64,000 nt of DNA from Phaeosaccion multiseriatum (GCA_965112735.1 OZ218952.1:992001-1056000), one strand, 5' to 3'. Shown: positions 3,001 through 59,286, counted from the stretch's first letter. Translations and numbers: made by a program. Notes: generated from the letters alone by a model not told the origin.

Positions 3001-4274
3001 CTCCTCCTCCTCCTCCTCCTCCTCCTCCTCCTCCTCCTCCTCCTCCTCCTCCTCCTCCTCCTCCTCCTCCTCCTCCTCCTCCTCCTCCTCCTCCTCCTCC
3101 TCCTGCTCCTCCTCCTCCTCCTCCTCCTCCTGCTCCTCCTCCTCCTCCTCCTCCTCCTCCTGCTCCTGCTCCTCCTCCTCCTCCTCCTCCTCCTCCTCCT
3201 CCTCCTCCTCCTGCTCCTCCTCCTCCTCCTCCTCCTGCTCCTCCTCCTCCTCCTCCTCCTCCTCCTTCTCCTCCTCCTCCTCCTCCCCGCACCCACCCAG
3301 CGTCCTCTTCATGCAGCTCTTCTTCGCCACTACGGGTGCGTGTGGCGACCTTGGTCTCGTCATGTCCACCGCACCCCTGCTGTTGCTCTTTTCCGTTGTA
3401 CAAATGGTGGTAAGTAAGATGCAGAAGGAAGGCAAACATACGAAATGGGATAATAGGAGGAGGAGGAGGAGGAGGAGGAGGAGAAGAAGCAGCGAGCACA
3501 TTAGCGCCTGGGTGGAGTAGGAATAGTGGCGACGGCAAGAAGGAAGGGAGGAGTAGTACTGTGGCGTGGGAGTGTAAACAGAGGCTCCGCTGTATAGAGT
3601 CTTTAACCACGAGTCCTATTCACCATCCTCTCACCACTACTTCTCCCAACCTTTCCCAACCTCCCCACCCACCTTCTTCTACCCCTTTCTCCCTGCGACA
3701 CGTACTTTCGACCCCACCCACCCACTCACTATCCACCCATCGATCCACCCATCCATCGATCCATCAATCCATCCATCCATCCATCCATCCATCCATCCAT
3801 CCATCCATCCATCCATCCATCCATCCATCCATCCATCCATCCATCCATCCATCCATCCATCCATCCATCCATCCATCCATCCATCCATCCATCCATCCAT
3901 CCATCCATCCATCCTTCCATCCATCCATCCATCCACCCATTCATCCATCCATGCACCCACCCACCTACCCATCCATCCATCCATCCATCCACCATCCACC
4001 CACCCTCCCATCCTCACCCACCCCACCCCTGTATCACCAACAGGTCCATTTCGGCTTCCTCGTGCTGACAGGCCGAGCGTTACGCCTCCCGTTCCGCGAG
4101 CTTTGCCTCGCCTCCAACGCCAATGTAGGGGGTCCGACAACGGCCGCCGCCATGGCTGCGGCAAAGAAGTGGAAGAGTCTGGTGTTGCCGGCCCTCCTCA
4201 CCGGCATCTTGGGGTATGCAACGGGGACGTTTGTTGGGGTTGGCCTAGGGCAGACGGTGCTGCGGTTGATGTAG
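1..4274 (+). CDS. DUF819-family multi-pass membrane protein, probably plastid-targeted; 5'-partial; 7 exons
   Basis: In-frame exons <1-477, 783-920, 1227-1352, 1522-1846, 2293-2371, 3301-3409, 4044-4274 with GT-AG boundaries. DUF819-type motifs: [74 protein letters not shown]. The N-terminus TFGLAF-QLP followed by a Ser/Arg-rich stretch resembles a bipartite plastid presequence. Confidence 0.88.
1857..3290. repeat. Intronic microsatellites (GAG)n, (GTGA)n and (CCT)n in the DUF819 gene
   Basis: Directly visible: (GAG)n ~1857-2085, (GTGA)n ~2372-2530, (CCT)n ~2780-3285. Confidence 0.95.
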
Positions 4275-5168
4275 AGGGAGGCAGGCAGGGAGGGAGGGAG
4301 AGGGAGAGGAAGATGCGGCCCCTACCTAGTACTTCTCCTGCTTGGGTCTTCTGTGACAAAGAGTGGTGCGGTCGGCCCCCCCGGACAGACGGGTTGGATT
4401 GGCGACCGCTCTCGTCAGTCTCGTCGGGGCCTGGTGGCACTTAACAAAATTAAAACTTTGAAAAAAAAAAAATGCCACTTGAGGGTATCGAATCCTCCTC
4501 TCGCAGTGGGACAGGACAGACACCCGCGTCCGACAGGTATTAGTAAGAAAAGAAAGCGGCTGCTGTGTTGCAGAGAGGCTTGGCGCTCCTTGTCCTTCTC
4601 CACCAGCTGGGGAAGGAATGACACATAGAGGGAGGAGGAAGGAAAGACCAAACATCCTGAGGAGGGAGGAGGTGAGAGGAAAGAAAACGCTGATTGACAT
4701 GTCAAAAAGCTTTGTCAAGCAGTGAAGGGGAGGAAGGAAGGCTTACGACCAGCAGCTGTGCCCGAGGACATACAGAAGAATGCGAGCATCGCTAGTAGTC
4801 GGGTGTGTGGGGCGTGGAGGGCGGCTAGGGCGGCTTTCTACTCGGCTGTAACTCTGTTCAACCCCGCAAGTTGAGGAACCCAACCTTCATTCCGTTCTCC
4901 CTCCTCCTTGAACCCCATATCCCTCCCGCCTCCCCCTCCCACCATCGTCTCTATGCATAGCCACAGCTCAGCAGCAGGGGCTGAAGGAATATAATCCCAA
5001 TCGGGCGGCCCGCCCGGGCCGTGGGGGAACTTCGAAGGGGGGGGGGGGAAGGACCCCGAAGCAGCAACAGGCGCGGGTGGCAGTGCGGCAAGAGATAGAG
5101 CGCACGCAGACGACGTAGGACAAGGGACGCGTGTGCAGTCCCATGCGTGACACACCTTCTCTCTGTAG

Positions 5169-9880: not shown

Positions 9881-12072
9881 GTCTGCTGAGCAGGAGCGCG
9901 TCTCGCATGGAGGAGGAGTGGAGGAGGAGGAGGAGGAGGAGGAGGAGGAGGAGGAGGAGGAGGAGGAGGAGGAGGAGGAGGAGGAGGAGGAGGAGGAGCA
10001 GAGGGGAGGAGCAGAGGGGAGGAGCGCCGAACCCAGGGCTTGGGTGGGTGGGTTTGGTGGGGTCGAGGCTATGTAGCCAAATGGCAACAGATGGCAGACG
10101 CCACAACCACATTGTACAAAAAGAGCGAGCGGGGGCAGAGGTGCAGGCCCACGCACGCACACACATATACACATCCAAAAAGAGAGGGAAGAGGGAAGAG
10201 GGAGGGAGCACTTCACACGTTGTCACACCTTCATGTCAAAAGCGAACAGTGAGGAGTGTATAGCTCTCCAAAAGGCGAGGAATGAGGTGGAAATAAATCA
10301 GGGAGGGAGTGGAGTGGACTTTTGTGAACAAGGGTAAGACAAAGGATACTAAGTAGTGAGAGAAGGGGATGTGGTGAGGGAGGGAGGGGAGGATACAAAA
10401 ATGTATTTGGCAAAGTGAAGTAGCGTCGTTGTGTTGGGGGGGGGGGGGGGGGGGGGAGTGTATACTCGTTTAGGCACATACACACAAACACACACACACA
10501 CACACACATATATATCCACGTGCACGAGGGATGCACCGCACTGTACACAGTCAGCCACAAATAGCTCAGAAATAGCTCGAAGAAGAAGAAAGTACAGAGG
10601 TGGGCGTCCAAACAAACCAACAGGAAAGGAAGGGGAGGGGATTGTACAAGTAGCTGAAGAAAGGGAGAGGGAGAGGGTGTAGAATTAATTGTGCACCCAA
10701 CCCCGTCCCCTCCCATTGTAAGAATAATAAAATGTATGTTTGTATTAAGAGAGATAACTGGGTGAACGGACAGCTAATCGGTTTTGCTGCAAACTCTGAA
10801 GGATACAGGTTGTTTGAGGTTCCGATGGCTTTATTGTGCCTCCCTTACCTATGGCTACTCTGGACGCTGAGCAGAAATTCACACGCACCTGTGGAAAGTG
10901 GAAAAAGGGGGGGGGGGGGGCGAGGGGGGGCTAATTTTCCCAGCGGACAGACACCCAATTCCCTTACGTGCCGTACTTATGTAAGGATGTGACGTACTTA
11001 CGTAAGTATGCGACGCACTTACGTAAGTTTCTAAAAGTAATATCTTTTCCAGATTTCAACACAAATTTGACCCTTAGTAACTTACTCCCGACTTCTAAAG
11101 GTGGCAATGTGTTCGTAAGAGGCAGGGCCAAGACAGGGAGGCAAGTACGGCGCCAGTAGTGGCTAAAGAAGAAAAAGAGGGGGGGGGGGGGGTGGGGGGG
11201 GTAGGCCCTGTCCGCAAAACGGGTGTGTCCGCCCACCCAGTTATCTCTCTTACGAAGTAGTTGTATAAAAACTGTTTTTTTGTTTTTGTTTTTTTCCCTT
11301 CCTTTCCCTTCACTCTCTTTTTTTCTACTTTTCTTTTTACTACTTACACGTCTCCCTGGGAGTCAGGGAGACACACGCAGGGCCAGCGCATAAGCCCCTC
11401 AAGTAAGCACTCAAAACTTGGGGGAAAATACAGGTGCTCTTGCTTAGCGTTGCCTACGGTGCCCTCTGGATTGGTCTGACAAGTGACCCGCCTTCCTCCT
11501 CCTCCTCCTCCTCCTCCTGCTCCCTTTCCTCCCTCGTCCTCCTCCCGCACGGCTTTCTCTGTTCTTGCACAACCTTCTCGGAACTTACCTCCTGAAACGC
11601 CACCCCCCCCCCCCCCTCCCTGCCCCTTTCTCCTGCTCGACTCCTTCTGCGGTCACTGCTGATGGGAGGGCCGGGCCGTGAAGCCTACGAGCCGCGTGTG
11701 TGTGCCTGAGACAAGAAGAGGGGAGAGAGAGAGAGAGAGAGAGAAACAGACAGACACATCCAGAGAAAAAGAGGGAGAGCGAGAGAGAGAGAGAGAGAGC
11801 GAGAGAGAAAGCGAGAGAGAGAGCGAGAGAGAGAGAGAGAAAGCGAGAGAGAGAGAGAGCGAGAGAGAAAGCGAGAGAGAGAGCGAGAGAGAGAGCGAAA
11901 GCGAGAGCACGGCACGTGTGAAGGAAGGCAGAAGTATGGCGCTCGTGGAATGGTGCATTGAAGCTTGACCTGTATCACCAACTGGGGATGAGGCGTCCGT
12001 CCCTACACCGCTTGTCGCCCCCGAAAGAGATGCACCCTCCCCCACCCCGCCTCCCCGTCTCCTCCTGGCTCC

Positions 12073-13831: not shown

Positions 13832-13946
13832 GGCGTGTATTGTACTTTCAGTTCATCGAGCTTCGTTCGTCGTAAGGGTCCCATCCACTGCCATCCCTCT
13901 TGAATCCCCCGATCCCCCGTATCGCCGACAGGACCTTGACATAAGG
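13832..13946. promoter_or_regulatory. Very short (~115 bp) putative bidirectional promoter between the ZC3H3-like and ThiO genes
   Basis: Divergent ATGs at 13831 (-) and 13947 (+). Confidence 0.5.
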
Positions 13947-15548: not shown

Positions 15549-15592
<44 letters not shown>

Positions 15593-15680
15593 GCAAGCGT
15601 CCAAGCAAGCGTCGTCCCCCATCATCGCCACCCCCCCGCACAGAGTGCTAGCCACGCCCCCTCGGGCTGCGGCAATGGGC

Positions 15681-15724
<44 letters not shown>

Positions 15725-16532
15725 CAGCAGCAGCAATTGGGCATCCAGCAGTAGCGGCGGTGCGAGTTTGCCCGACATTAGCGACTCTGCCTTTGGGTCC
15801 ACTCTGTCCAAAGACAGCACCATGTCGACGGAGACGACTGCAGAAGAAGGGGACGCGTTTGAGAAGGCCGCGTCTGCGGGGGAGGCGATGGGAGCGTATG
15901 CAGATGGCATGGCCAAGCTCTTTGGGGAGGGAGGCACAGGGCCAATGTCCACAGACGAGGATGGGACGCAGGTTGACCCTTACGTTGCGTCTTTGCTCGA
16001 AAATGAGGATGACGAGGAGGAAGAGGACGTCGGCGACTATGCGAGCTACGCGGCCGCTGGTACTGCAGCGTCGTCCTCTCGGGTGGACAGCATCGGCTCC
16101 AGCAGCAGCAGCAGTGCGAGCCTGCCCGACATTAGCGACTCTGCCTTTGGGTCCACTCTGTCCAAAGACAGCACCATGTCGACGGAGACGACTCAAGAAG
16201 AAGGGGACGCGTTTGAGAAGGCCGCGTCTGCGGGGGAGGCGATGGGAGCGTATGCAGATGGCATGACCAAGCTCTTTGGGGAAGGAAAAGACTACTCTTC
16301 TGGATCACCAACCCGTGTACAACATGATGGTGCTGGCGACGGCGCAGGTAGTATCAACACCAACATTATGAGCGATGATGCCGCCCTGCTCTCTGCCATA
16401 CTCAACGAGAATGACGAGGACGATGATGATGACGATGGCGACGACATGGATGACTACACCGCCAAGGACGGCGGCGGCTTCTTGACGGGGGGGGTGGTGG
16501 AAGGCCTTCAAACTCAGACTCCGGCCCCCGGT

Positions 16533-16573
<41 letters not shown>

Positions 16574-18068
16574 GGAGGAGGAGGAGGAGCAAGGCGCTGC
16601 TGGTGTGTATGACGAGCTTTTCGTGGACGGTCAGGCCAAGTTCGTGCCCACTGGGGATGTGGTGAATGAGTACCAAACGTCCGACCGCTTCAGCAACGAG
16701 GCCCTGCTGGCGGCTCGGCAGTCAAACCTCTTGGAAGAGATCCCTGCAGACTTTATGGCGGATACATTCGACGAGGAGGGTCCCAAGTCACTGGAGGAGG
16801 CCTTGGGGGTCAAGGTCGTGGCACCCTGGCAGGAGGGATCGGAGAGGGTGGCCGAGGCGCTTGGGGCCAAGATTGTGGATGTAGAAGTGCCGGACGGGAC
16901 GGATTTGGACGTGTTGATGCGGGAGGGGGTCGAGGTCGAGGCCTCGACGACCAAGATTATGTGGCATCGAAAGGACGGTTTGGAGCCCCTGCAGATCCCG
17001 GTCGGCACCAATCTGGGGCAGATGCTTCAGGCAGGCACTGTGCCCGGCATGCCTGGCTACCGAGGCCCCGACGCTGCTGCGGATCCCGAGGTGGATGGGG
17101 GCCGTGTGGTGTCTAACGAGGCCATCAAAGGCCCCACAGAGAGAACCCCGGAGATGTCTGCGTTTTATGCCAATGTCATGAAGAACAAGGCCGCTCAGCA
17201 GGAGGGACATGTCGGTGAGGGTGGGGGTGGCTTGCGAGACCCTTTAGATGATGATGATGATGATGATGATCATGACGGCGATAACGATGTAGGTATGGGG
17301 ATCAACAAGAGTCAGCACCAGCAGCAGGCGGGGAATTGGCTGCAAGGCATCTTCGGAGGGGCTGGAGGAGGGGGCAAGCCGAGTCGAGCGGCGGGTCGCG
17401 TGAATGGCCAGAGGGGCAGTGGCAGTAGCAGCAAGAGCGATGCCGGGGGTATTCGGCTGCATCAGCAGCACTCCGAGCCCGCAGCAGTTGATGACACAGC
17501 AGGAGCAGCAGGCGGAGGTGCGCCTGTATGGAGGAGGGGGGAGAAGGAGGGGGTGGAGGGAGAGGACGTGTTCGGAGACGGGTACGACTTTATCCTTGCC
17601 CACCGGGGCGACACGGACGGCGGCTCCGAAGTGGCCGACGCCGCTCGCGAACTCAATCGGGAGCGAGATGAGGAGGAGGAAGAGGCGGCGTTTGAAGCTA
17701 TGGCAGCGCAGGCAATGGGCGAGGTGCGGGCGGCGGAGACGGCGGAGAGTCAAGTCAATACGAGTAACAGTAGTAGAGGAAGTAGTATGGCGCATACTCA
17801 CAGTCAAAGCCACACGCAATTGGGCATGACAGCAGCAGCAGCAGCAGCAGGGCGGGGGGGGCGTGGTATCGGTGGTAGAGGAGGTTCCCGTCTGAGCGAG
17901 GGCGGGAGGGGTAGAGGCCAGAGGTGGCGCTCTCTCTTGTCGGGTGTGGGGCTGTCGTCGTCATCAGCATCTTCGTCTTCATCATCCGGCGGCGGGCTCT
18001 CCTTGCTTTGGGTGTTGCCGCTCTTCGGCAGGCGTCTGCGCGACAGCTTGCTCGGCCTCTTGCTTTGA
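13947..18068 (+). CDS. thiO: Glycine oxidase ThiO-like FAD-dependent oxidoreductase (DAO family) with an N-terminal presequence and a long acidic C-terminal extension; apparently intronless
   Basis: Rossmann motif DVVVVGGGLAGLSTALEL, plus ASFAAGGMIAPQAE, PQKGQMLSL, YIIPKKDGRIVVGATVE, WAGLRPITPD, GGYWRNGVALAPKTG. The ATG at 13947 is in frame with the 1470-aa ORF. Confidence 0.85.
15762..16282 (+). repeat. Intragenic direct repeat (~167 bp x2, period 354 bp) in the ThiO tail
   Basis: 15762-15928 and 16116-16282 both encode ASLPDISDSAFGSTLSKDSTMSTETT(A/Q)EEGDAFEKAASAGEAMGAYADGM(A/T)KLFGE. Confidence 0.95.
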
Positions 18069-18868
18069 TGGGTGTGCGTGTTGGTGATACAGGGGTGGGT
18101 GGATGGGTGGGTGGATGGGTGGGTGGGTGGGTGGGTGGGTGGCACAAATAGCAGTAAATGTAGTTGGTAGGACAGAGAGGAAGGACAGGGAAGTAATCTC
18201 TTCAGTAGTTGTTACATTAATTTAACACGATACCTGCCTACCATTGTGTGTGTTCGTTGGGCGGGGGAGACGGGGGGCGCGATGAGGCTCTCCTCTTTCA
18301 TCCACCACACCACACGTCTTGTCTTTTCATGAATCACCCGTCCGTCTTGTATCGACTCTTGCTGTGCACCTCGATTGCACAACAACAACAACAACCAAGT
18401 TGCCAAGACCAACCGACCGACTTAACCCACTCACACCCCCGCCCACAACCGACCGATCTAACCCACTCACACACCCACCCACCCATCCACGAGCGTCACA
18501 TGCATGCCCTGCTTCACATCACATCAACCCGTCTGAGTTCGTGGGTGGATCAATGACCAGAGATCATTAGGTCTGCGTTCGTCTGCTAACCACTGACCAC
18601 AGGGGTCAAGTTGGTCTGCTCACCTTTGCCCAGCCATTAGGGATCAATAGACCGAAGGCGGTTAATCATTCGGTCAAGGTGTGTGTGTGCGCGCGTGCGC
18701 TTTGGGCACCCCTGTCACCCCCCCCTTTTAAATGAATACTGCATAATCTTACATTATAACAAAGTACCCACGAGACTGCATGTGTGCGTGTGCGCGTGCG
18801 TGTGTGAGTGGGTGCGTGCGTGGGTGAGTGTGTGCGTGGGTGCGTGGGTGCGTGTTCGTGCATCGCTG

Positions 18869-20451: not shown

Positions 20452-36705
<16,254 letters not shown>

Positions 36706-41858: not shown

Positions 41859-41933
<75 letters not shown>

Positions 41934-42360
41934 TTTCTCTCCCTTTCTGGTCTCTCTTGTCTCCTCTTCTTTTTGATTATCTCTCTGTCTATTTCTCTCT
42001 TGATGCCATCGCGTGAACCTTCAATGGGGAGAGGGGGGCGTAGGAAAGCCCCCCTTTACACTTTTATCCTGTTTTTTTGGGTTTGATCACCCCATCATCG
42101 ATCATCTTTCCACGAGCGTATCACCAACACACCATCTTCAACAGGTTGGCACATGATGGCCCGAGGGACCGTGAAGCTCAATTAGCAATTAGAGCGCCCA
42201 GGGAACCAGACAAGCATAGGCGGGGATGAGGAGTCGGTGTTGATGTCCTCGACATCTCCTGTAGAACTATTTTCTCCTGGATTGTGCCTCAAACGAATCC
42301 GCTCTCCCGCCATCAGCAGTAAGACAGCCTTAGGTTAAAGGGGGGGGAAGGAGTTTCGCA

Positions 42361-45300: not shown

Positions 45301-46654
45301 GCAGTCAGCCAGTCAGTCAGACATTCACTAGCTAGTCGGTCAGTCAGTCGGTCAGTCACTCAGTCATCAGTCCATCAGTCAGTGGTGAGCACGTAAGTAA
45401 ATTTGTTGTCAAGCACGAGCACAGTCCCAGTCAGAGCAGACAATGGAGAATCTGCTCTGCGATGCTTTGTTTTTAGACAAACTTGGGAGCTCAATCACTC
45501 ACCCACCCACCCACCCACCCATCCCCTCACTCACCCACCCATCCACTCACTCACCGTAATAGGGAACGGCAATCTACAGGGTGGCCGTCATTCTCCTCCA
45601 CTCCTTCAACCTCCTTTACCACGCGAGAATCAAGCCCCTCCTCGCCCCCGGAGAAGCACGTGAGCTTGAGGAAGCGGAGGCCGAGGATAGGAGACGGCGG
45701 CGGGCCACTGTTTCTAAGCTGAACAAGCGAATGGCGGCCCTGAGAAAGCGCAAGGGAGGCTGCAAGGCGCGTGCTGCAGCTCCTGTATCACCAACTGGTG
45801 GTGGTGGAGGTGCAAGTAGCGGCAAGGTGAAGGACGGGGCGGTCTCTGTGCCGAAGCGCAAGCGCGGCAGGCCTCGCAAGGACAGGACGCAGGAGCAGCA
45901 GCAGCAGTTGGTGGTCCAGCAGCCGACAGTATCGAAAAAGAAGAAAGCAGTCCCTACTACAGGTCAACAGCAGCAGCAGCAGCAGCAGGAGGAGGAGGAG
46001 GACCATCAGCCCAAGCGGAGCCGGAGCAGTTGGACGGGAAGCGTCAAGTCAGTCCGGTTAATCGCTAAGGAGCACCCCCCATCGCCACCACCACCACCCT
46101 CTTCCAGCCTTGCCAATCCGAATGATGGAATAGGGAAGAAGCAAGAGAAACGAGCCGACGTGTGTGCCCCAGGTGGGTTGATGAGTGGTCCAAGCCCAAA
46201 GCGAGTGAAGCTCGGCGATGCCCCTATCATTGATGACGATGACGAGGGGGAGGCGGAGGGGGAGGACGGGGAGGGGGGTTTTGGGTATGGGACGGATGAA
46301 GTCATTATTGAGACCACTAAGGGGTCACAGCAGCGGCCGGAGGAGTTCGCGTACCTGGGGGACGCAGAGGGGAGGGAGGAAGAAGATATGGAGGAGGATG
46401 AGGAGGAGGGGGGGGAGAAGGAGCAGGAGGAGGAGGACGACGAGGAGGAGGAGGACGAGCAGGAGGAGGAGGACGAGGAGGAGGAGGAGGAGGAGGAGGA
46501 GGAGGAGGAGGAGGAGGAAGAGCAGGAGGAGGAGGAGGAGGAGGAGGAGGGGGAGGAGGAGGAGGACGAGGAGGAGGAGGAAGAGGAGCGTCCACCGGCA
46601 GCAGCAGCCCTCCTCCTCCCCCTCCGTCGCCCTTGCTTTGGTGATGGTTGGTGA
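42361..46654 (+). pseudogene. SNF5-like/PHD/bromodomain/AT-hook gene copy 1; C-terminally truncated and chimeric at the duplication junction; frameshift in the G-run near 43550
   Basis: Same exons as copy 2, but the last exon runs at 46604 into antisense WD40 sequence (..[22 protein letters not shown]). Confidence 0.65.
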
Positions 46655-46809
46655 GGTGGGACAGATGACTGAGGTCGAAAAGATGAATGAGGCCGTCAGC
46701 ACTCCCGGTGGCCACACAAAGCGAGTGCGACCAGTCCATGCCCGCCGACCCTTCGTGCCTGCCGTTTCGCATGGGTAAGTGCATCATGCCGTTTCGGTCC
46801 ACCCGACCG

Positions 46810-46843
<34 letters not shown>

Positions 46844-47735
46844 CGACACGATCTGATCTTCTATGCCCTCCAAGTCCGAGTAGTGAGCTCGACCCCATCC
46901 CTCTCATCCCTCCTGCCTCTCCTCGCTCGCCTGTGTGGTGGTGATCTCCTCCATTTGCGCCGAGCAGCACTCGTGGTGGCCGGTAATTGGGGCCACGGAA
47001 GAAACAGCTCCGAATAGGCTGTTTTGGTTTCGCAGGTGGGTGCCGTTCGCAATGTGGGTGCACATACGAGGGGAAGGATGGCGGACAAGCAAAGCAGTAC
47101 AAGAAGAGAAGCATACGCAGGCACGTACGAAAGTGGATTGGATTGGGAGGAGAGAGGGGTTAGGGGGGGGGTCAATTTATATATATATATCGTGTATACA
47201 TATCATATACATCGCATATACATTGTATATATGATACATATATACAATATATATATATGCGATGTGTATACACTTGATGAGGGATCGTGAACGGCGTGCA
47301 CAAGTCTCTGTGGAGAAGGGTGCTCCTTGGAGCAGGCACAGAAGAAGCTTCACCCAGGTGGGGTACAAGGACAAGAAAGGCTAGAGTAGAACAGAGAGTA
47401 GAGCAGCGAGTATGATATGTGGATGTATTGGGGGTAGAGAGAGAGACAAGAGAGAGAGAGAGAGAAAGAGAGACAGACAGAGAGAGACAGAGAGACAGAA
47501 AGAGAGAGAGACAGAGAAGAGAAGGAGAGAGAGACAGAGACTTGCAGAGAGAGGCAGATACAGACATGACTCACTCACCCACTCACGCACTCACTCACTC
47601 ACGCACTCACCCAGTTCTTGGTTTGGTGTCCTCGAAGAGCGCACATCAAGCTCAGAGAGGGGGACGGGGTCCCGCTCTCTTTCCGCCCCCACCCCACCCC
47701 TCCTCCTCCTCTTGCTCCTCCTCCTCCTCCTCCTC

Positions 47736-47776
<41 letters not shown>

Positions 47777-50306
47777 CCACCAATGGCTGCCACCCTTCCT
47801 CCCTCTGCAGCTGCGAGCCCCCCTGCTACCCCTAAAAGCCCATTGGCATATTCTCCCCCCGTTACGCCGGACCCCACATCCGCGCCGGCGCCCGCACCAC
47901 GGCCGAGGCCAGGCTGGCTACCCCCCCTGTCCTCCCACTCTCTGCGTTGAAAGATTCGCAGCGTGTTATCGAAGCAATTTGCGGCGACAAATGGGCCGGA
48001 CTCGTCTCTCTGCCCCGCCGCAGAGGGGCAGCCCGTGAGGTAGCTGTCGCATGCGGCCAGCACGAGGAGGAAGGGAGGGGGGCGGAGGGGAGGGGAGGGG
48101 AGGGAAGAGTTCAAAGAGGGAGGGCACACACACACACACACACACATACACACATACACACACACGCACACACACACACTCACACACGCACACATACACA
48201 CACACACACACAGACAGGCACACACACACGCACACACACACTCACACATACACACACACATGCACACACACACACACACGGCTCTCCTCTCTCGTCTTAC
48301 CCACCCACCCCTCTCCTCTCCACCCACCCACACACCCCTTTCCCCTTTGGTCTCACCTAATGTAGATGGGCTCTTCAAGCTGAAACACGTCCAAGACCCC
48401 CCCTGTTCGAGCGTCCCACGTGACGATTTGGCCGCTGGAGTCAGAAGAAATCACCCTGAACGCAGCAAGTCAGGGAGGAGGAGAGGGAGGGAGGGAGGGA
48501 GGAAGCGCGGAGAGAGGGAAGGAGGAAGGATGGAGCGAGGACGGAGGGATGGAGCGAGGAGGGAGGGAGGGAGGGAGGAGGGGAGGGTGGGAGGAAGCGA
48601 GGAGGGAGGGAAGGAAGGAGGGATGGAGCGAGGAGGGAGAGATGGAGGGAGGGAGGGAGGGAGGGAGGGAGGAGGGGAGGGAGGAAGCGAGGCGGGAGGG
48701 AAGGAAGGAGGGATGAAGCGAGGAGGGAGAGATGGGGGGAGGGAGCGAGGGAAGGACGGAGGGATGGAGCGAGGAGGGAGGGAGGGAGGGAGGGAGGGAG
48801 GGAGGGAGGGGACGAGGAAGGAGGGAGGGAGGGAGTGAAGGAGGGAGGGAGGGAAGGAGGGAAGGAGGGAGCGAGGAGGGAGCGAGGAACGGAGGGAGGA
48901 ACGGAGGGAGGAACGGAGGGAGGGAGGGATGGAGAGATAAGAGCCCTTGTCTTTGGCCTTTCTAACAGGCATGCTCTGCCTTTGGGACAAAACACGAAAC
49001 GTTTGTACGTGAGGGGACAGAGCAGAAAGAGCTGCTGCGAAGTGCAACAACGACAAGAGAAAGTCGTGCCTCACACGACACTTAACCGAAGAACCTCCTC
49101 CTCCTGCTCCTCCTCCTCCTCCTCCTCCTCCTCCTCCTCCTCCTCCTCCTCCTCCTCCTCCTTCTCCTCCTCCTCCTCCTCCTCCTCGCTCCCGCTTCCC
49201 CCTCCTCCTTCCTTCGCTGTGCTTACCGTCTTCCTTCGGCAAACACACTCAAAGAGCTGACCGCTGCGCCACTTTGCCACGCCGCCACTCGCCCCAGCGG
49301 ACAGCGAACGTCGAGAGTGTATATGCTCTTACTCGTGGACCCCGCATAGGCCACAAGCGGTGCCACTTCGCCCCCCCCGCCCGCATCCCAACCTCCTCCT
49401 CCTCCTCCTCCTCCTCCTCCTCCTCCTCCTCCTCCTCCTCCTCCCTCCTCCCACTGTAGCGGCGAGGAGCAGCAGCGCACACACTGAATCAGCCCGTCGA
49501 GTCGGAGCAAGCTCGTCTTGAGCTGCACCGTCTCCACATCCCAGAGCCCCACGCTCTGATCAAATGACGCGGTCAGGAAGCTACGCCCCCCGGGGACCCA
49601 GGTGACGTCACTGACGAGCTGATGATGCTCTACCAGACAGGCCTCCTGACTGTACGGGTACTTGGCCTGCCACAGTCGGACGGACTTGTCAAAGCCGGCA
49701 CTGGCCACGAGGCTTCCCCCCGGGGAGTAGCACGCGGCGTATACTGCACCGGTGTGCCCTACGAGCTTGGCTTCGGCGACGAGAGTGCGGCTACTTCCTG
49801 AGCCTCTACCACCCGAGGACTCTCTCCCAGCGTTGGCGCGACCGGAGGTCATCGAGCCTAGGTCTGCCAAGTCGTCGAGCGTTGAGCCTGTGAGGGCGGG
49901 GCAGGGGCGCGGGGGGGAGAGAGAGGAGACGGGGAAGGGTCATGTTTCCTCCATGTTAAAAGAGTACACTGCGGGGTGTTGGGATAACTACACGCCATGC
50001 CATGCCCCCAACTCTTTTCAGTCTCCTCTCCCCCCTAAGGCCCTTTCTTTGTTATCACACTGTACCTGCAGTAAACACGTCGCCTCCTGTGCCTTCTGCA
50101 CCCAGCGGCGGTATCTGCCCGCCATCCAGGCTGAAGATGCCCCCGCTGTTCGCCGACGCACTGCCGAGCATGTAGGACAGCTCATACACGCTCTTCTTGA
50201 GGGCCTCATTGTCCTTGCGCACCGCTTCTAGTGCCGTTTTCAGAGAGTTTCGCTCCGCACACACCGCCTCGTACTGGCTGGAGAGCTGGCCGGTGATCTT
50301 GGCCAT
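46317..50306 (-). pseudogene. WD40 gene copy 2; lacks the last WD repeat (truncated at the junction, replaced by an antisense poly-Pro tail)
   Basis: Matches copy 1 from the ATG at 50306 down to 46608, then reads into the antisense of the poly-Glu exon and stops at 46317. Confidence 0.65.
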
Positions 50307-50404
50307 GTTCCTCCCGCCTTGCTTGCTCCCTCCCTCCCACACCCCGCCCGCTTCGTTCTATACTCTCGGGTAGGCTGCTAGTACGTGCCCCCCCCCCCAC
50401 TCTC

Positions 50405-50461
<57 letters not shown>

Positions 50462-50888
50462 TTTCTCTCCCTTTCTGGTCTCTCTTGTCTCCTCTTCTTT
50501 TTGATTATCTCTCTGTCTATTTCTCTCTTGATGCCATCGCGTGAACCTTCAATGGGGAGAGGGGGGCGTAGGAAAGCCCCCCTTTACACTTTTATCCTGT
50601 TTTTTTGGGTTTGATCACCCCATCATCGATCATCTTTCCACGAGCGTATCACCAACACACCATCTTCAACAGGTTGGCACATGATGGCCCGAGGGACCGT
50701 GAAGCTCAATTAGCAATTAGAGCGCCCAGGGAACCAGACAAGCATAGGCGGGGATGAGGAGTCGGTGTTGATGTCCTCGACATCTCCTGTAGAACTATTT
50801 TCTCCTGGATTGTGCCTCAAACGAATCCGCTCTCCCGCCATCAGCAGTAAGACAGCCTTAGGTTAAAGGGGGGGGAAGGAGTTTCGCA

Positions 50889-53800
50889 ATGGGGGCACAG
50901 TGGGAGATAGGAGAATGGGACGCCCCAGCTACGCCTCCCTCTATATACGTGTCTTTTGCTGTCGATGAAAGCACAAGCTGCAACAGCCTGCGCGCCGCCC
51001 TCAGCAACAGCGGCAGTACCGGGACCAGCAACAGTGGGGGAGCTTCCCCAGCCCGGCCGCCTGCGTCGTCGAAGTAATGACCAGGGATCGGCAACTATGT
51101 GGTTCAGAGACACCATTGAATGGACGCACGAGGTCAGTAGAGCACGTCATGGCGAGAGAGAGAGAGAGGTGGACAGCAAGACGGGCCTCGCAGGTCGTAA
51201 CCCTCCTTACCGATTCACCTCCTTTTCTATGTGCACTGAACAACCCTGCCACACAATCTACTTATTCTGTTCTCTTCATTCGTTCGTTCTATCTGCATGT
51301 CTGTCTCCCTCGCCACCAACCAGGTCACTCCGGATGCTTTTGCAGAGGCTCTCGCCCGGCAATTCAATTTAGACTTCGACCAAATGGTGGATGTTGCTGC
51401 CTCCATCGAAGCCCAGCTGCGAGAGGTGGAGGACACGGGGTCCCTTGGGGGGGCCGCTGCGGCAGCCGCAGCTGCTGACATGTTGCGGTGGGGCAGGAGT
51501 GCTGCGGCAAGGGCAGAGGTAGACACAGCGGGGATGGCAGTGGATGGAGGAGGCGCAGGAGGAGGAGGTGGAGGAGGAGCAGAAGCAGGAGATGCTGCTG
51601 TGGCTGCGGCTGCTACTACTGCTACCGCTGCGAGTGTAGGGTCGGGGTCCAATGGGAAGGGAAAGAGCAAGCCGACAGGGGCGGTGGCAGCCGCGGACAG
51701 AAAGAGGAGGGAGAGGGTGGGCGGGGGAGAAACGCTATCCAGCGGCAGCGGTAGCGGTGTGGCGGGGGCGGCAGGTGGGGGGTCCCAAGCTAGCGCTGGT
51801 TTGTCTGTGTCCGGTAGTGGGAGAGGTGTCGGAGTCGGCAAGACGGCCAAGACGGCCAAGAAGACCGTTGTCACGAGGGGGAGGCCGCCAAGCAACAGCA
51901 ACAGCGGCAGCAGCAGCAGCAGCTGTGCAGGTGTGGGTGTGGGAAGTGGTAATGGCGGCAAGGGGATGGCGGCGGCGCCTGCTACACAAGGGACAGGGAA
52001 GAAGGGAGGGAGGCTGCCGAAGAAGAAGAAGAAGAAGAAGAAGATGAAGAAGAAGGGCATCACACAGCCTGGGGGAGGGGGGAAGACCTCTACTGGGAAG
52101 GCCTGCGCCTCTGCTGCTGTATCACCAACTGCTACCGCTGCTGCTGCTGCTGCTGCTGTATCTGCTGCCTCTGCTGCTGCTATCTCTGCGGCCTCTGCTG
52201 CTGCTGCCGCCGCCGCCGCGGCCGCTGACGACGAGCCAGCCTCTGTCGAAGACGGAAACCTCGAGCTGTGCACCAAGTGCTTTAAAGGAGGGGACATGCT
52301 TTGCTGCGACTTTTGTCCCAGGGCGTTCCACTTGCGCTGTTCGGGCTTGAGGACCAAGGTAAGTCAATGAATGGAAGGGGAGGGGAGGGGAGGCGGCATC
52401 GAATCAGAAGGGAATCAGGGAATACCTTCCCACATTCCGTTTCTTTTAAGAGGGGACTTACCCCCTGCTTGTCCTGCTTGTCCTTCCTGCCCCCCCTCCT
52501 CCCCATCCTCTTCCCTCCCTCCCTCCCTCCCTCCCTTCCTTCTTCCTTCCTTCCTCCCCTCCCTCCCTCCCCTCCCTCCCTCCTTCCCTCCCCTCGCTCC
52601 CTCCCCTCCTCCCTCCCTCCCTCTCCAGGACCTGCCTGAGGAAGAGTGGTCGTGTATGAGGTGTGTAGAGGGGTATGACTCAGCCGTGCCCGCAATCAGA
52701 GCGGCGGAGGAGGAGGGCATTATCGGCCAGGTGAGAGTGAGAGAACGAGCTATTTCAGTTTCAGCTTCTGTATGTCGGCCTTGACGTATTTTCGACTATT
52801 CACCGCCTCGCTCCACCTACTCCCTTACTTACTCACTCACTCACTCACTCCCACCCCCCCCCCCCCCTCCCTCCCTCCCTCCCTCCCATTATCTCCCTCT
52901 CCTTTCCCTCCCTCCCTCCCTCCCTCCCTCCCTCCCTCCCTCCCTCCCTCCCTCCCTCCCTCCCTCCCTCCCTCCCTCCCTCCCTCCCTCCCTCCCTCCC
53001 TCCCTATCTCCCTACCTCCCTCCCCCCCTCCCTCTCCTTCCCCTCCCCCCTCCCTCCCCTACCGGACTCGCCCTTCAGTTCCACGGCATCTTGGATTGGC
53101 TGCTGTCGCACGAGCTGGCAGACCCCTTCCTCGTAAGTACGCTGTAGTAGTTAGGAGGACTCTTGCCTGTGAATGACTGTGGTTGGGAAGTCGACTCTGT
53201 ACTGGAGTGAACCTCCCTCCTCTCCCTCTCTCCCTCTCTCCCTCCCTCACCTGTCCACCTCGCTCCCCCCCCCCCCCCCACTCCTGCTCACGTTGTAACC
53301 CCCAATCCTGCTCACCTTGTAAACGCTTCTCCTTGCGCCCCACAGAAGGAGCTCGACACGACGCTGTTGGAAGACTACGACCAACTCATCCCCCATAAGA
53401 TGGACCTGGGGCAGATCGAGAGCAAGCTTGAAGAGGGTTACTACTGCAGCTCGTCCACGATGGAGGATGGGGAAGGGGGAGGGGGAGGAGGGGGGGGAGG
53501 AGGAGGAGGGGAAGATGATGTTGATGCATTAGTGGAGGAGACTGCCAACAAGCCTCGACTACGGAGCTTTGTCAGCGATGTGCGGCTTGTGTTCAACAAC
53601 TGCATGACCTACAACAAGGAGGTGAGTGAGTCAGTGAATGGTGTCAAGTACGAACAGTGAGTCAATCAGTCAGTCAATCAGTCAGTCAGTCAGTCTGTCT
53701 GTCTGTCAATCAGTAAAACAGATAGCCAGTCAGTGAGTAGTCAATCAGTCAGGCTGTCCATCATTCAGTCAATCATTCTGTCAGTCAGTCAGTCTACGCT

Positions 53801-55337
53801 CAAGTCAAGCATTCAGTCAGTCAAGCAGTCAGCCAGTCAGTCAGACATTCACTAGCTAGTCGGTCAGTCAGTCGGTCAGTCACTCAGTCATCAGTCCATC
53901 AGTCAGTGGTGAGCACGTAAGTAAATTTGTTGTCAAGCACGAGCACAGTCCCAGTCAGAGCAGACAATGGAGAATCTGCTCTGCGATGCTTTGTTTTTAG
54001 ACAAACTTGGGAGCTCAATCACTCACCCACCCACCCACCCACCCATCCCCTCACTCACCCACCCATCCACTCACTCACCGTAATAGGGAACGGCAATCTA
54101 CAGGGTGGCCGTCATTCTCCTCCACTCCTTCAACCTCCTTTACCACGCGAGAATCAAGCCCCTCCTCGCCCCCGGAGAAGCACGTGAGCTTGAGGAAGCG
54201 GAGGCCGAGGATAGGAGACGGCGGCGGGCCACTGTTTCTAAGCTGAACAAGCGAATGGCGGCCCTGAGAAAGCGCAAGGGAGGCTGCAAGGCGCGTGCTG
54301 CAGCTCCTGTATCACCAACTGGTGGTGGTGGAGGTGCAAGTAGCGGCAAGGTGAAGGACGGGGCGGTCTCTGTGCCGAAGCGCAAGCGCGGCAGGCCTCG
54401 CAAGGACAGGACGCAGGAGCAGCAGCAGCAGTTGGTGGTCCAGCAGCCGACAGTATCGAAAAAGAAGAAAGCAGTCCCTACTACAGGTCAACAGCAGCAG
54501 CAGCAGCAGCAGGAGGAGGAGGAGGACCATCAGCCCAAGCGGAGCCGGAGCAGTTGGACGGGAAGCGTCAAGTCAGTCCGGTTAATCGCTAAGGAGCACC
54601 CCCCATCGCCACCACCACCACCCTCTTCCAGCCTTGCCAATCCGAATGATGGAATAGGGAAGAAGCAAGAGAAACGAGCCGACGTGTGTGCCCCAGGTGG
54701 GTTGATGAGTGGTCCAAGCCCAAAGCGAGTGAAGCTCGGCGATGCCCCTATCATTGATGACGATGACGAGGGGGAGGCGGAGGGGGAGGACGGGGAGGGG
54801 GGTTTTGGGTATGGGACGGATGAAGTCATTATTGAGACCACTAAGGGGTCACAGCAGCGGCCGGAGGAGTTCGCGTACCTGGGGGACGCAGAGGGGAGGG
54901 AGGAAGAAGATATGGAGGAGGATGAGGAGGAGGGGGGGGAGAAGGAGCAGGAGGAGGAGGACGACGACGAGGAGGAGGACGAGCAGGAGGAGGAGGACGA
55001 GGAGGAGGAGGAGGAGGAGGAGGAGGAGGAGGAGGAGGAGGAAGAGCAGGAGGAGGAGGAGGAGGAGGAGGAGGGGGAGGAGGAGGAGGACGAGGAGGAG
55101 GAGGAAGAGGAGCGTCCACCGGCAGCAGAAGAAGGAAAGAGGAGTACAGGTACTGCCAGTAGTTCCACTCGCTGTGAGCTACTGGGAACCGAATGGGACC
55201 CATGTGCTGACGATGACGACTTCGAGGATGAGGAGGCGGAAACCATGGGGCAGATGCGCAGGAGGCTGCAGGCCGGCAAGCAGGAGAAGGACAGGCTGCT
55301 CCTCCTCCAGAGGGGGGGAGGCGGAGGAGGGGCGTGA
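50889..55337 (+). CDS. Chromatin reader: SNF5-repeat-like domain + PHD finger + bromodomain + AT-hook + acidic tail (copy 2; 3' end intact; 2-nt shorter G-run near 51036)
   Basis: Exons 50889-51132, 51324-52358, 52629-52730, 53079-53132, 53346-53621, 54087-55337. SNF5-like: WFRDTIEW..VTPDAFAEALARQFNL..VAASIEAQLRE. PHD: CTKCFKGGDMLCCDFCPRAFHLRC..LPEEEWSCMRC. Bromodomain: LLSHELADPFL..DYDQLIPHKMDLGQIESKL..FVSDVRLVFNNCMTYN. AT-hook: KRKRGRPRK. Confidence 0.87.
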
Positions 55338-57810: not shown

Positions 57811-58462
57811 TAATGTAAGAGTCTCACGTGTGGAGACGAGTGTGAGGTGGAAGAGCACAGAGACAGGACAAGAGCAGAGTGTTGTTGTTGTTGTTGTTGT
57901 TGTTGATGTTCGTGGGAAGGAGCTCCAGAGACAGGACAAGAACAGAGTGTTGCTGTTGGAAGAGAAGCTCGTCGCCGCCGCGTGTGTGGACATGTACGCA
58001 ATGCATGTACACAGCAGCCCAAGGGCATCGGCAGTGTGTCGCATCCCACACGTTTGTATATAGAGAGAGCGAGCAGCAGGGGGAGAGGGTGCGAAGAAGT
58101 GGGGCGCAGAGGGACTAGAGCAGAGTATCACCCTTTGAAGGGACGGTTCCCTCTCTTGCTGTCATCCTTCTCTGTCACGCCAACATTTGCGCTCTTTTGG
58201 ATACTACTACTACTATAAAAGAAGTAATAAAATAATACATTTGGAAGGTCCGTGTATTCTTCGTGTGGACCCTGTTCTGTATGTGTTCGGCGCCGTGCTT
58301 TGGCCCGACCCCGACCCCGACCAGCTGACCCCTTCCCGTCTCGCTTCAGGACCGAAGTACCTCAGCGTGTTTCGGCACACTCACCCTTCCCCACCTTTGC
58401 CTCCATCTCCACCCCCCCCCCCGGTGTCTGGCTACAAGCAAGAGAGCCCCACAGCCCCCCAG

Positions 58463-59286
58463 CGGCAAGAGAAGACATATCTATCCGCCGCGTGGCTGAG
58501 AGAGACGCTGAGCGCAACTCCTACCTGGTGGGGTTTACGCACGACATACAACAAAGGGAATGAGCGTACCGCACTATATGCTCAGGGTGCAGATGCTTCC
58601 GCCCTCCCCTCACCATGTCCCTTCTCTCTTGCTTACGTACTACACAGAAAGGGAATTACGTAACACACTCTATGCTCAGGGTGCAGATGCTTCCGCCCTC
58701 CCCTCACCATGTCCCTCTCTCTTCTCTCTCCTCCCCTTCGAGGAGACTTTGTGGTCACCATAAGATCACCATAAGGTCACCATAAGGTCACATAACATAA
58801 GGTCAACATAAGGTGGTGGCCTTGCCGAGGTCCACGTTAGTACTCGAGAGAAACATTGTTCTGCTGGTCCCAGCACAGCACAGCCGACCGCAGCGAAGGC
58901 ACAGCACAGCACACAGCTGGCCAGAGCAGAGCAGAGCAGAGCAGAGCAGAGCAGAGCAGTTGGTGATACAGAGCACAGCAAAACAGAGAAGTGCAGGACG
59001 CTGGTGCACATCCGCTGTGTGGTGGGGAGTGAGGCAGGTGGGTAAGACAGGGAAGATGACTCGATCCGAAGTCTGTCGTCTCCCCTCCCCGCCCCACTCC
59101 AACGTATGTAGGGCTACGTAACTACGTACGTGATGGCCATGACCACCTCGTGGAGCTGTCCGCGCCTGTTCCGGCGCTGCAAGGAGGGGCCCTCGTGGAA
59201 GTGCGTGTTCTTTGCCGTCCCTCTCTCTCTCTCCCTCCCTTCCTTTCCACAGATGGCACTCATATCCAAACTGAACACTGACGTGG
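58463..59286 (+). CDS. Probable small-exon gene of unknown function (partial; start and end not resolved)
   Basis: AG/GT-bounded exons 58463-58527, 58813-58835, 58997-59037, 59112-59200, 59253-59286 join in phase: AREDISIRRVAERDAERNSYL-VVALPRST-TLVHIRCVVGSEA-GLRNYVRDGHDHLVELSAPVPALQGGALVE-MALISKLNTDV. The intervening segments are repeat-filled like other introns in this window. Confidence 0.45.
58578..58812 (+). repeat. ~46-bp direct repeat x2 plus a degenerate 11-bp (GGTCACCATAA) tandem array
   Basis: tatgctcagggtgcagatgcttccgccctcccctcaccatgtccct at ~58578 and ~58671; ggtcaccataa-like units across 58753-58812. Confidence 0.85.

What the first reader, a model, noticed from the sequence alone, without database searches (positions are those of the whole stretch)
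4031..58969. Highly iterated, frame- and strand-independent DNA motif CAGTTGGTGATACAG in exons, introns, gene 3' flanks and a promoter
Seen in sequence: 18 exact copies of GTTGGTGATAC or its reverse complement (15 independent of the duplication). There are also near-variants at 16302, 22399, 24663, 28518, 33325 and 35581. Uniform-base expectation for an 11-mer on both strands of 64 kb is about 0.03. In coding exons it is read in different frames and orientations (AVGDT, QLVIQ, AVSPT) and mostly sits in low-complexity Ala/Gln/Gly linkers. It also occurs in introns (4031, 24063, 58959), just 3' of stop codons (11972, 18080) and in a divergent promoter (42118/50646). It is non-palindromic, not tandem, and has no conserved flanks or terminal repeats, so it is neither a microsatellite nor an obvious transposon. 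Inference: selection or a motif-generating process acts on the DNA, not the protein. Analogies would be cyanobacterial HIP1, bacterial DNA-uptake or Chi sequences, a recombination-hotspot motif, or a genome-wide site for a chromatin, replication or methylation factor. I know of no described function for this motif.
Basis: partly seen in the sequence, partly recalled or inferred. Interest (0 to 1): 0.9.

Follow-up and report, generated by a model that had tools for sequence, protein, structure and literature searches.

The report
Dispersed 12-15 nt DNA micro-insertion motif
A fixed 12-15-letter DNA word (CAG-TTGGTGATA-CAG) is scattered about once every 3-4 kb through exons, introns and intergenic DNA of a microsatellite-rich alga; it looks like a tiny sequence copied into many sites by an unknown process, and nothing like it is described.

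Summary
GTTGGTGATAC occurs 18 times, 15 of them independent of a near-perfect 8.5-kb tandem duplication. Chance predicts 0.01-0.3. It is by far the most over-represented complex k-mer in the window.

The core G-TTGGTGATA-C is invariant. The outer CA and AG are 70-90% conserved, and nothing beyond about 5 nt is shared, so it is not a fragment of a larger element. Copies lie in one ORF in different phases and orientations, and also in introns and intergenic DNA.

7 of 15 copies touch an array (null 3.8%, P=5e-7). Some sit in phase inside CAG or AGAGC tracts. Others sit exactly at the 5' edge of (GGGT)n or (AGGG)n arrays.

The host is a PX-clade stramenopile alga. 113 kb from relatives holds no copy. 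Viral and metagenome hits are single chance matches, and the literature has nothing.

The scan's first-stage readers noted the same motif before, in at least 33 notes on other pieces of this genome.

Best reading: a lineage-specific 12-nt unit with a fixed register, copied into (C)AG sites at repeat tracts by a templated process and then filtered by selection in exons. The mechanism is inferred, not shown.

The parts
4029..4043 (-). Copy CTG-TTGGTGATA-CAG. Class B: it directly abuts the 316-nt (GGGT/GGAT)n array 3713-4028 on its 3' side.
11970..11984 (-). Perfect 15-mer in unique sequence, followed by GTCAAG.
17485..17499 (+). Degenerate copy CAGTTGaTGAcACAG inside the ThiO-like ORF. It reads AVDDT in a non-conserved segment.
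18078..18092 (+). Copy GTG-TTGGTGATA-CAG. Class B: it lies 12 nt after the ORF stop (18066-18068) and directly abuts the (GGGT)n array 18093-18142.
22364..22378 (+). Copy AAG-TTGGTGATA-CAA in a 413-aa ORF (reads VGDT). It lies 7 nt after a (GCT)n array.
22397..22411 (+). Degenerate copy CAGTTGGTGATtCGA, 33 nt after the previous copy.
22796..22810 (+). Copy CAG-TTGGTGATA-CGG followed by CAGCAGCAG. Same ORF, reads VGDT.
24061..24075 (+). Copy GAG-TTGGTGATA-CAG. Class B: it lies 9 nt inside an intron (the exon homology ends at 24052, then GTGAGG) and abuts an (AGGG)n array.
25659..25673 (+). Copy CAG-TTGGTGATA-CAA in a 369-aa ORF (reads QLVIQ).
27463..27477 (+). Perfect 15-mer followed by (CAG)7. 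ORF 26782-27996, reads QLVIQ.
27575..27589 (+). Copy preceded by (CAG)6-7. Same ORF and frame as 27463 but a different motif phase (reads AVGDT).
28516..28530 (-). One-mismatch copy CTG-TTGGTaATA-CAG. Class B: it abuts the 262-nt (GAGG)n array 28253-28514 and shares GACCTG on its left with the copy at 4029.
34061..34075 (-). Perfect 15-mer, antisense within the + strand ORF 32452-36705 (reads AVSPT).
35549..35563 (+). Perfect 15-mer in the same ORF (reads VGDT), in a non-conserved linker just before the conserved separase-like block.
35579..35593 (+). Copy TAC-TTGGTGATA-CAG, 30 nt after the previous one (reads LGDT). It is not a tandem duplicate.
42116..42130 (-). Copy GTG-TTGGTGATA-CGC in unique non-coding DNA. 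Its duplicate is at 50644-50658.
43590..43604 (-). Perfect 15-mer at the edge of the CAG-type array 43602-43698. Its duplicate is at 52117-52131. A partial CAG-ATACAG lies 37 nt away at about 43629.
45783..45797 (-). Perfect 15-mer after (CAC)n. Its duplicate is at 54307-54321.
45905..45919 (+). Degenerate copy CAGTTGGTGgTcCAG in a CAG tract. Its duplicate is at 54429-54443.
58957..58971 (+). Perfect 15-mer interrupting an (AGAGC)n array. Removing 12 nt restores the 5-nt repeat phase.
46608..55128 (.). Second copy of the 8.5-kb tandem duplication (first copy 38054-46604). It carries the three non-independent exact copies at 50646, 52119 and 54309.

Best explanation
The motif is the product of a lineage-specific, DNA-level copy-and-insert process.

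Proposed unit and target: a unit of fixed register, TTGGTGATACAG (12 nt), is written in one orientation after a 3' ...G, preferably ...CAG. With the left junction it reads as the 15-mer CAG-TTGGTGATA-CAG. The preferred sites are trinucleotide tracts and the edges of other microsatellites, which are plausible break or nick sites in a genome that is 26% microsatellite.

Inferred steps: the fixed register, single orientation, frayed 1-3-nt junctions and complete lack of flanking homology fit synthesis from a short defined template. That could be a reverse-transcriptase or telomerase-like extension of a ...(C)AG 3' end, or target-primed copying of a very short RNA. The new 3' CAG would then be joined to the other DNA end.

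After insertion, selection would act as a filter. The unit is 12 nt and has no stop codon in 5 of 6 phases, so copies should persist in low-complexity Ala/Gln linkers as VGDT, QLVIQ or VSPT, and in introns and UTRs. Copies elsewhere would be lost, and surviving ones would then decay by point mutation.

What is shown: over-representation; invariant core and frayed edges; no larger element; multiple phases and orientations; association with arrays; in-phase interruption of arrays; absence from relatives.

What is inferred: that copies are insertions; the 12-nt unit; any RT or template involvement.
For: - Over-representation: 15 independent exact 11-mers against 0.007-0.3 expected. It is the only strongly over-represented complex k-mer.
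- Shape of the motif: the core is invariant in 16 of 16 copies. C/A/G at -3/-2/-1 occur in 11, 13 and 15 of 16; C/A/G at +9/+10/+11 occur in 16, 14 and 12 of 16. No information lies further out.
- Not a target-site duplication: left and right trinucleotides differ in 9 of 16 copies, yet the register always starts at TTGG, even at non-CAG sites.
- Insertion into an array: removing 12 nt restores the phase of the (AGAGC)n array at 58957. CAG tracts continue in phase across copies.
- Array association: 7 of 15 copies lie within 3 nt of an array edge against 3.8% expected, P=5e-7. Four copies sit exactly at the 5' edge of the G-rich strand of (GGGT)n or (AGGG)n arrays.
- DNA-level origin: one ORF holds copies in different phases and orientations. 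The copies at 35549 and 35579 lie in a non-conserved linker next to a conserved block.
- Decay: a tail of degenerate copies exists, about 6 against 16 intact cores, with changes that alter the encoded residues, e.g. AVDDT at 17485.
- Lineage specificity: no copy in 113 kb from Ectocarpus, Chrysoparadoxa and other relatives, whose tandem-repeat fraction is 1-4%.
- The motif is in short-read contigs: contigs of three runs end at or beside the copies, and a loose end shows another genomic copy, TCTTGGTGATACAGCAGCC.
Against: - No empty site, presence/absence polymorphism or orthologous pre-insertion allele was available, so 'insertion' rests on context alone.
- No template RNA, tandem (two-round) copy or associated enzyme was seen in this window.
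- The conservation gradient is symmetrical on both sides. A protein-binding site with soft edges would look the same.
- The very low divergence of the core (about 3% per site against about 20% at the edges) could reflect purifying selection rather than youth.
- Only one window (55 kb of unique DNA, 16 copies) could be analysed. The reads came from the same sample as the assembly.
Confidence: 0.45

Rival explanations
1. The motif is a cis-acting DNA site kept by selection. It would be the 15-bp recognition sequence of a sequence-specific protein, for example a multi-zinc-finger, chromatin, replication or recombination factor, or a factor that caps or limits microsatellite arrays. In this reading its abundance reflects function rather than ongoing insertion.
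For: The core is invariant and conservation declines symmetrically at both edges, as in a binding-site logo. Few copies are degenerate. Copies occur in either orientation. Copies lie at array boundaries. The density, about 1 per 3.7 kb, is comparable to bacterial Chi or uptake sequences (own knowledge).
Against: Selection cannot create a 9-nt non-CAG core inside CAG or AGAGC tracts without a copying step, so an insertion process is needed anyway. Placement is not consistent relative to genes: copies lie in exon interiors, introns, a 3' flank and intergenic DNA. Only about 6 of roughly 110 arrays of 30 nt or more carry it. Degenerate copies show it is not strictly maintained. No relative has it.
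Confidence: 0.2
2. The motif spread by ectopic gene conversion or recombination between CAG tracts. One founder interruption of a CAG repeat would have been copied into other CAG repeats using the repeat itself as flanking homology.
For: 10 of 16 copies have CAG on the left and 7 of 16 continue into CAG on the right. The extended context AGCAG...CAGCAG is common. About 14% of CAG/CTG runs of 3 or more units carry a copy.
Against: At least 6 of 16 copies have no CAG-tract homology on one or both sides: 4029, 11970, 18078, 24061, 42116 and 45783. The copy at 58957 sits in an AGAGC array, and the class-B copies border GGGT or AGGG arrays. Conversion would not give the frayed 1-3-nt junctions.
Confidence: 0.12
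3. The motif is the stereotyped excision footprint, or minimal remnant, of a cut-and-paste DNA transposon with a 3-bp CAG target-site duplication, or of an introner-like element. Alternatively it is the extreme 5'-truncated 3' end of a microsatellite-targeting non-LTR retrotransposon.
For: CAG occurs on both sides in 7 of 16 copies. Arrays lie mostly on the 3' side, as with retroposon tails. One 3'-only partial copy, CAG-ATACAG, exists. Other first-stage notes report site-specific non-LTR elements elsewhere in this genome (not tested here). Microsatellite-specific LINEs are known (own knowledge).
Against: No parent element is present: the half-sites GGTGATA and GTGATAC occur alone only twice, and no flank is shared. 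The core is not palindromic, as footprints of inverted-repeat elements would be. The flanking trinucleotides are not true duplications. Random 5' truncation would give a ladder of lengths with shared upstream sequence, not 16 of 16 copies starting at the same base.
Confidence: 0.1
4. The motif is a technical artefact, such as an adapter, a barcode, or a base-calling or polishing error in low-complexity DNA.
For: Copies favour low-complexity contexts. All reads available came from the sample that was assembled.
Against: Contigs built from three separate runs at depths of about 400x, 90x and 45x run up to the copies, and one loose end carries the motif at another locus. Degenerate copies with point changes exist. 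The copies in long ORFs are compatible with the reading frame. The 11-mer matches only unrelated PCR primers in the literature.
Confidence: 0.03

Closest known systems
Interstitial telomeric sequences inserted by telomerase at double-strand breaks (Nergadze et al., PMC2246262; PMC8537989; MLH1 suppression of such insertions, PMC5388398)
   Same: A short, fixed-register, orientation-specific unit is written into internal chromosomal sites without flanking homology. It is primed on a short matching 3' end, and such insertions are more frequent when mismatch repair is weak. This genome's 26% microsatellite content is compatible with weak mismatch repair, but that is not shown.
   Different: The unit is not the telomere repeat; other first-stage notes report CCCTAA ends, which was not tested here. 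Copies are single units, not arrays. The density is far higher, about 1 per 3.7 kb, and includes coding exons. No template RNA is known.
Microsatellite-specific non-LTR retrotransposons (Dong, Waldo, Mino, Kibi, Koshi; own knowledge of Kojima & Fujiwara's surveys)
   Same: Both target simple repeats, and orientation is tied to the repeat strand. The 3' end of the inserted sequence anneals to the repeat.
   Different: Those are kilobase elements with ORFs and a ladder of 5'-truncated copies. Here every copy is the same 12-15 nt, and no longer relative is in the window.
Over-represented bacterial genome words: DNA uptake sequences (DUS/USS), Chi, cyanobacterial HIP1, REP
   Same: Both are 8-12-nt words hundreds of times above expectation. 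They are scattered through genes in several reading frames at a density of one per 1-5 kb.
   Different: Those are prokaryotic. They are explained by uptake bias, RecBCD orientation or methylation, and HIP1 is palindromic. None is embedded in phase in microsatellites. No evidence of function was obtained here.
Introner-like DNA transposons of marine algae (Micromonas, Aureococcus; own knowledge of Huff et al. 2016 and Gozashti et al. 2022)
   Same: Both are lineage-specific bursts of one short sequence into thousands of genic sites in an alga. The 13-mer GTTGGTGATACAG even begins with GT and ends with AG.
   Different: Introners are about 50-300 bp or more, have inverted-repeat ends and true target-site duplications, and are spliced out. 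This unit is 12 nt, appears to be retained in ORFs as coding sequence, and a 13-nt intron would shift the frame.

Membership tests
Fragment of a transposable element or MITE | Copies share sequence beyond the motif (element body or terminal inverted repeats) | tested here: not met
   Ungapped flank identity is 26-29%, at background level. No informative column lies beyond -5..+14 apart from CAG periodicity. A self-BLAST finds no repeat covering any copy other than the 8.5-kb duplication.
Fragment of a transposable element or MITE | True target-site duplication (identical flanking bases on both sides) | tested here: not met
   Left and right trinucleotides differ in 9 of 16 copies, e.g. GTG...CAG, CTG...CAG, GAG...CAG.
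Transposon excision footprint | Parent elements with the same termini are present, and footprints are near-palindromic or heterogeneous | tested here: not met
   The half-sites GGTGATA and GTGATAC occur alone only twice. The core is non-palindromic and invariant. Only 55 kb was searched.
Microsatellite, minisatellite or satellite | Head-to-tail tandem copies of the unit | tested here: not met
   No tandem copies in the window; the closest pairs are 30, 33 and 112 nt apart with unrelated spacers. Another first-stage note mentions the motif in 'an intron array' elsewhere; its structure could not be checked here.
Interstitial telomeric sequence (telomerase insertion) | The inserted unit equals the organism's telomere repeat | not testable with these tools
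   No chromosome end lies in the window. Other first-stage notes report CCCTAA units at ends, which do not match the motif.
Bacterial-type over-represented signal (DUS/USS, Chi, HIP1) | Strong over-representation irrespective of reading frame | tested here: met
   15 copies against 0.007-0.3 expected. Several phases occur within one ORF.
Bacterial-type over-represented signal (DUS/USS, Chi, HIP1) | A known cognate machinery (uptake receptor, RecBCD, methyltransferase), or palindromy for HIP1 | not testable with these tools
   The host is a eukaryote. The motif is not a palindrome. No base-modification or binding data are available.
Structured RNA gene or tRNA-derived SINE | Match to an RNA family or tRNA fold | tested here: not met
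   Rfam gathering search of the whole window: 0 matches. ARAGORN: 0 tRNA genes.
Spliceosomal micro-intron or introner | Removed from mRNA at its GT...AG ends | not testable with these tools
   No run identified as RNA from this organism was available. A 13-nt GT...AG excision would shift the frame, whereas the copies keep long ORFs open when retained.
Sequencing or assembly artefact | Absent from independent read sets, with no signs of evolution | tested here: inconclusive
   The motif is seen in a loose end of contigs of two runs (X24, X4), and contigs of all three runs end at or beside the copies; mutated copies exist. However, all runs are from the sample that was assembled.

The most novel reading that the evidence does not exclude
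This alga has a dedicated RNA-templated 'writer'. A reverse-transcriptase or telomerase-like ribonucleoprotein with a short fixed template would extend (C)AG 3' ends at breaks in microsatellites by exactly TTGGTGATACAG. It would tag or heal tens of thousands of sites, including coding exons. That would be a natural genome-wide templated micro-insertion system with no described counterpart.
Probability: 0.15. Interest if true: 0.92.

Novelty: categorically new. Interest (0 to 1): 0.78.

Why it matters
If the copies are insertions, this is the smallest self-propagating sequence unit seen in a eukaryotic genome. It is far below MITE size, and it reshapes proteins four residues at a time as VGDT, QLVIQ or VSPT.

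It would reveal a new way of repairing or marking breaks in unstable repeats. It could also point to an enzyme that writes a defined 12-nt sequence at a 3-nt target, which would interest genome engineering.

If it is instead a binding site, it would be a rare eukaryotic analogue of Chi, DUS or HIP1.

Either way the question is directly testable. The motif is abundant, and the scan flagged it in at least 33 notes on other pieces of this genome, so a whole-genome census and one population or haplotype comparison would settle insertion against selection.

Tried and rejected
- **Literature search** for the 11-mer on both strands found only unrelated PCR/LAMP primers.
- **Viral contigs** gave only single chance matches to the exact 15-mer; 3 of 120 loci hold more than one 11-mer.
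- **Metagenome contigs**, searched with a 19-mer CAG-embedded version, gave 17 hits. 15 of them are on contigs of 30-47% GC; none shows the motif's microsatellite context or density, and one holds a second, one-mismatch copy.
- **Reads.** The second, 26730-28250, showed contigs breaking at the copies but gave no polymorphism and no RNA information. Run X23, a different sample, did not cover the locus.
- **Orthologue comparison** to show a clean 4-residue insertion failed. The motif-bearing segments are unalignable linkers in CFAP46/separase-like and ThiO-like proteins.
- **Stop-phase filter** on CAG runs: 0 of 6 Ser-phase runs carry a copy against 3 of 18 other runs. This is not significant and is not used.
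- **Other dispersed motifs** were not found in this window. CTGCTTGAC, with 8 copies, is unconvincing.
- **Resemblances recalled from memory** were considered and dropped for lack of exact or extended matches or any supporting result. They were the U6 ACAGAGA region, the tRNA D-loop, the tRNA-Gly 5' end, a primer-binding site complementary to a tRNA 3' CCA end, Tc1/Sleeping Beauty ends, the Tetrahymena chromosome-breakage sequence, and Myb/E-box half-sites.
- **Capture of random fragments of a 12-bp satellite** was rejected because every copy has the same register.
Full report
**Observation.** GTTGGTGATAC or its complement occurs 18 times at exactly the coordinates given. Dinucleotide shuffles of the window give 0.01 copies. 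Markov models of order 1 to 5, trained on the window itself, give 0.007 to 0.3. The window holds a head-to-tail duplication, 38054-46604 and 46608-55128. The two copies differ by 2 mismatches and 13 short indels. Three motif copies are therefore not independent. That leaves 15 independent 11-mers, or 16 for the core TTGGTGATA. After removing low-complexity words, every one of the top 9- to 13-mers in the window is a sub-word of this motif. Nothing else comes close.

**Anatomy.** Aligning the 16 independent copies gives c/g-A-G-TTGGTGATA-C-A-G. The stretch G-TTGGTGATA-C is invariant except for one C at -1. The outer positions are conserved in 11, 13 and 15 of 16 copies on the left, and in 16, 14 and 12 of 16 on the right. 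Beyond that the only signal is the 3-nt periodicity of CAG tracts. Ungapped flank identity is 26-29%. Half-sites are not found on their own, and a self-BLAST finds no repeat that covers a copy. So the motif is not a piece of a longer element.

The two flanking CAGs are not a target-site duplication, because they differ in 9 of 16 copies (GTG...CAG, CTG...CAG, GAG...CAG, CAG...CAA and so on). Even so, the register is always the same. The mismatch spectrum of the 15-mer is 7, 5, 6 and 6 copies with 0, 1, 2 and 3 mismatches, against 1.4 expected in total. Most differences lie at the edges. A handful of copies have core substitutions: 17485, 22397, 28516 and 45905. The motif therefore does decay.

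**Context.** The window is extraordinary in being 26% short-period tandem repeat. Seven of 15 copies lie within 3 nt of an array edge, against 3.8% for random unmasked 11-mers (P = 5e-7). Two situations recur.
- *Class A.* The copy sits in phase inside or at the end of CAG tracts (27463, 27575, 34061, 35549, 43590) and inside an (AGAGC)n array (58957). In the AGAGC array, deleting 12 nt restores the pentanucleotide phase.
- *Class B.* The copy sits exactly at the 5' edge of the G-rich strand of (GGGT)n or (AGGG)n arrays. On its left is unique DNA and a non-CAG trinucleotide (4029, 18078, 24061 and the one-mismatch copy at 28516).

Arrays lie on the 3' side of the motif about four times more often than on the 5' side. 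Only about 6 of roughly 110 arrays of 30 nt or more carry a copy, and about 14% of CAG/CTG runs do. The motif is therefore not a general array boundary.

**Coding status.** The region 21.3-36.3 kb is one + strand gene related to CFAP46/separase-C proteins of Ectocarpus. It holds 9 copies with an intact TTGGTGATA core and 2 degenerate copies; 9 of these 11 are in sense orientation and 2 are antisense.
- ORF 26782-27996 reads the copy at 27466 as QLVIQ and the copy at 27578 as AVGDT, in the same reading frame.
- ORF 32452-36705 reads AVSPT from an antisense copy, and VGDT and LGDT from two sense copies.
- The two sense copies in that ORF lie in a non-conserved linker immediately before a block conserved with Ectocarpus.
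- The copy at 24061 begins 9 nt inside an intron.
- The copy at 18078 begins 10 nt after the stop of a ThiO-like ORF; its 11-mer core at 18080 is 12 nt after the stop.
- The copy at 42116 is outside any long ORF.

Only one of the six phases of the motif has a stop codon. Read in the CAG-tract phases, it gives Ala-tract VGDT, Gln-tract QLVIQ and antisense Ala-tract VSPT. Those are exactly the readings seen.

**Is it real, and whose is it?** Contigs built from three runs of the assembled sample, at about 400x, 90x and 45x, run up to the copies. One loose end carries the motif at another locus. Degenerate copies and frame compatibility also argue against an artefact. No independent isolate was available, however.

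The ThiO-like protein is 63% identical to Chrysoparadoxa, 57% to Ectocarpus and 60% to Heterococcus. The host is therefore a stramenopile alga of the brown-alga/xanthophyte (PX) clade, with no close relative in the databases. Six loci from relatives (113 kb) contain no copy and are only 1-4% tandem repeat. The 15-mer in viral contigs and a 19-mer in metagenomes give only isolated chance matches. The literature library holds only coincidental primers. Rfam and tRNA scans of the window are empty. First-stage readers of this scan noted the same motif in at least 33 notes on other pieces of this genome. It is therefore genome-wide.

**Interpretation.** A 9-nt non-CAG core lying in phase within CAG and AGAGC repeats cannot be reached by point mutation. 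The copies must have been written in by copying.
- Ectopic conversion between CAG tracts cannot be the whole story, because at least six copies lack such flanks.
- Footprints or truncated retroelements are unlikely. There is no parent element and no length ladder, and the core is not palindromic.
- Capture of random fragments of a satellite would not give a constant register.

What remains is a process with defined ends, one orientation and 0-3 nt of junctional play. The process I think most likely is synthesis from a short fixed template, primed on a ...(C)AG 3' end at a nick or break in or beside a repeat tract, followed by joining. Selection would then keep only the in-frame, stop-free copies in exons.

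The closest documented mechanism is telomerase-mediated insertion of telomeric repeats at internal breaks (PMC2246262, PMC8537989). That process is suppressed by MLH1 (PMC5388398). The extreme microsatellite load here would fit weak mismatch repair, but this is speculation. I give 0.45 to the general insertional reading and about 0.15 to the specific RNA-templated writer.

The main rival, at 0.2, is a selected protein-binding site. It explains the soft-edged logo and the low divergence of the core, but it still needs an insertion step.

**Verdict.** The 'DNA-level' inference is supported. The analogies to bacterial signals are untested. No known family fits: each defining feature that could be tested was not met. 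The mechanism remains inferred from one window. A whole-genome census plus one haplotype or isolate comparison would be decisive.

Noticed in passing
window 1-64000: 26% of the window is tandem repeat of period 12 or less, in about 200 arrays of many unit types. Loci of related algae (Ectocarpus, Chrysoparadoxa and others) have 1-4%. This points to a lineage with extreme microsatellite proliferation.
   Followed up: partly
window 2372, 8909, 9366, 20878, 28670: (GTGA)n arrays begin exactly at junctions that look like 5' splice sites (...G|GTGAGTGAGTGA...). It is as if the GTGAGT donor itself had expanded into a microsatellite at intron starts.
   Followed up: no
window 38054-46604 and 46608-55128: A near-perfect head-to-tail 8.5-kb duplication with 2 mismatches and 13 short indels. 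It is either a very recent duplication or an assembly or haplotype artefact.
   Followed up: partly
window 13656-18068 (+): The ThiO-like (glycine oxidase) ORF is 1470 aa, against 830-900 aa in relatives. It is inflated by poly-Ser, poly-Gln and poly-Asp tracts and by an internally duplicated block of about 55 aa.
   Followed up: partly
window 4029-4043 and 28516-28530 (both -): These two class-B copies share six more bases on the left (GACCTG). On the + strand they read C-rich array + CTGTAT(C/T)ACCAACAG|GT. That looks like a polypyrimidine tract plus CAG acceptor, so the motif may have been co-opted as a 3' splice site.
   Followed up: no
window ~43629 (-): A partial copy, CAG-ATACAG (3' half only), lies inside the same CAG tract 37 nt from the full copy at 43590-43604. 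It could be a truncated insertion or an internal deletion.
   Followed up: no
window 29814-30007: An exact 97-bp x 2 tandem repeat built from GTCAGTCAGTRCYTGGT-like subunits lies inside an intron of the CFAP46-like gene. It contains TACTTGGTG, a weak resemblance to the motif that is probably coincidental.
   Followed up: no
window 27361: A G-homopolymer differs by one base between runs X24/X4 and X1/the assembly, inside a long ORF. It is probably a homopolymer length error in one data type.
   Followed up: no
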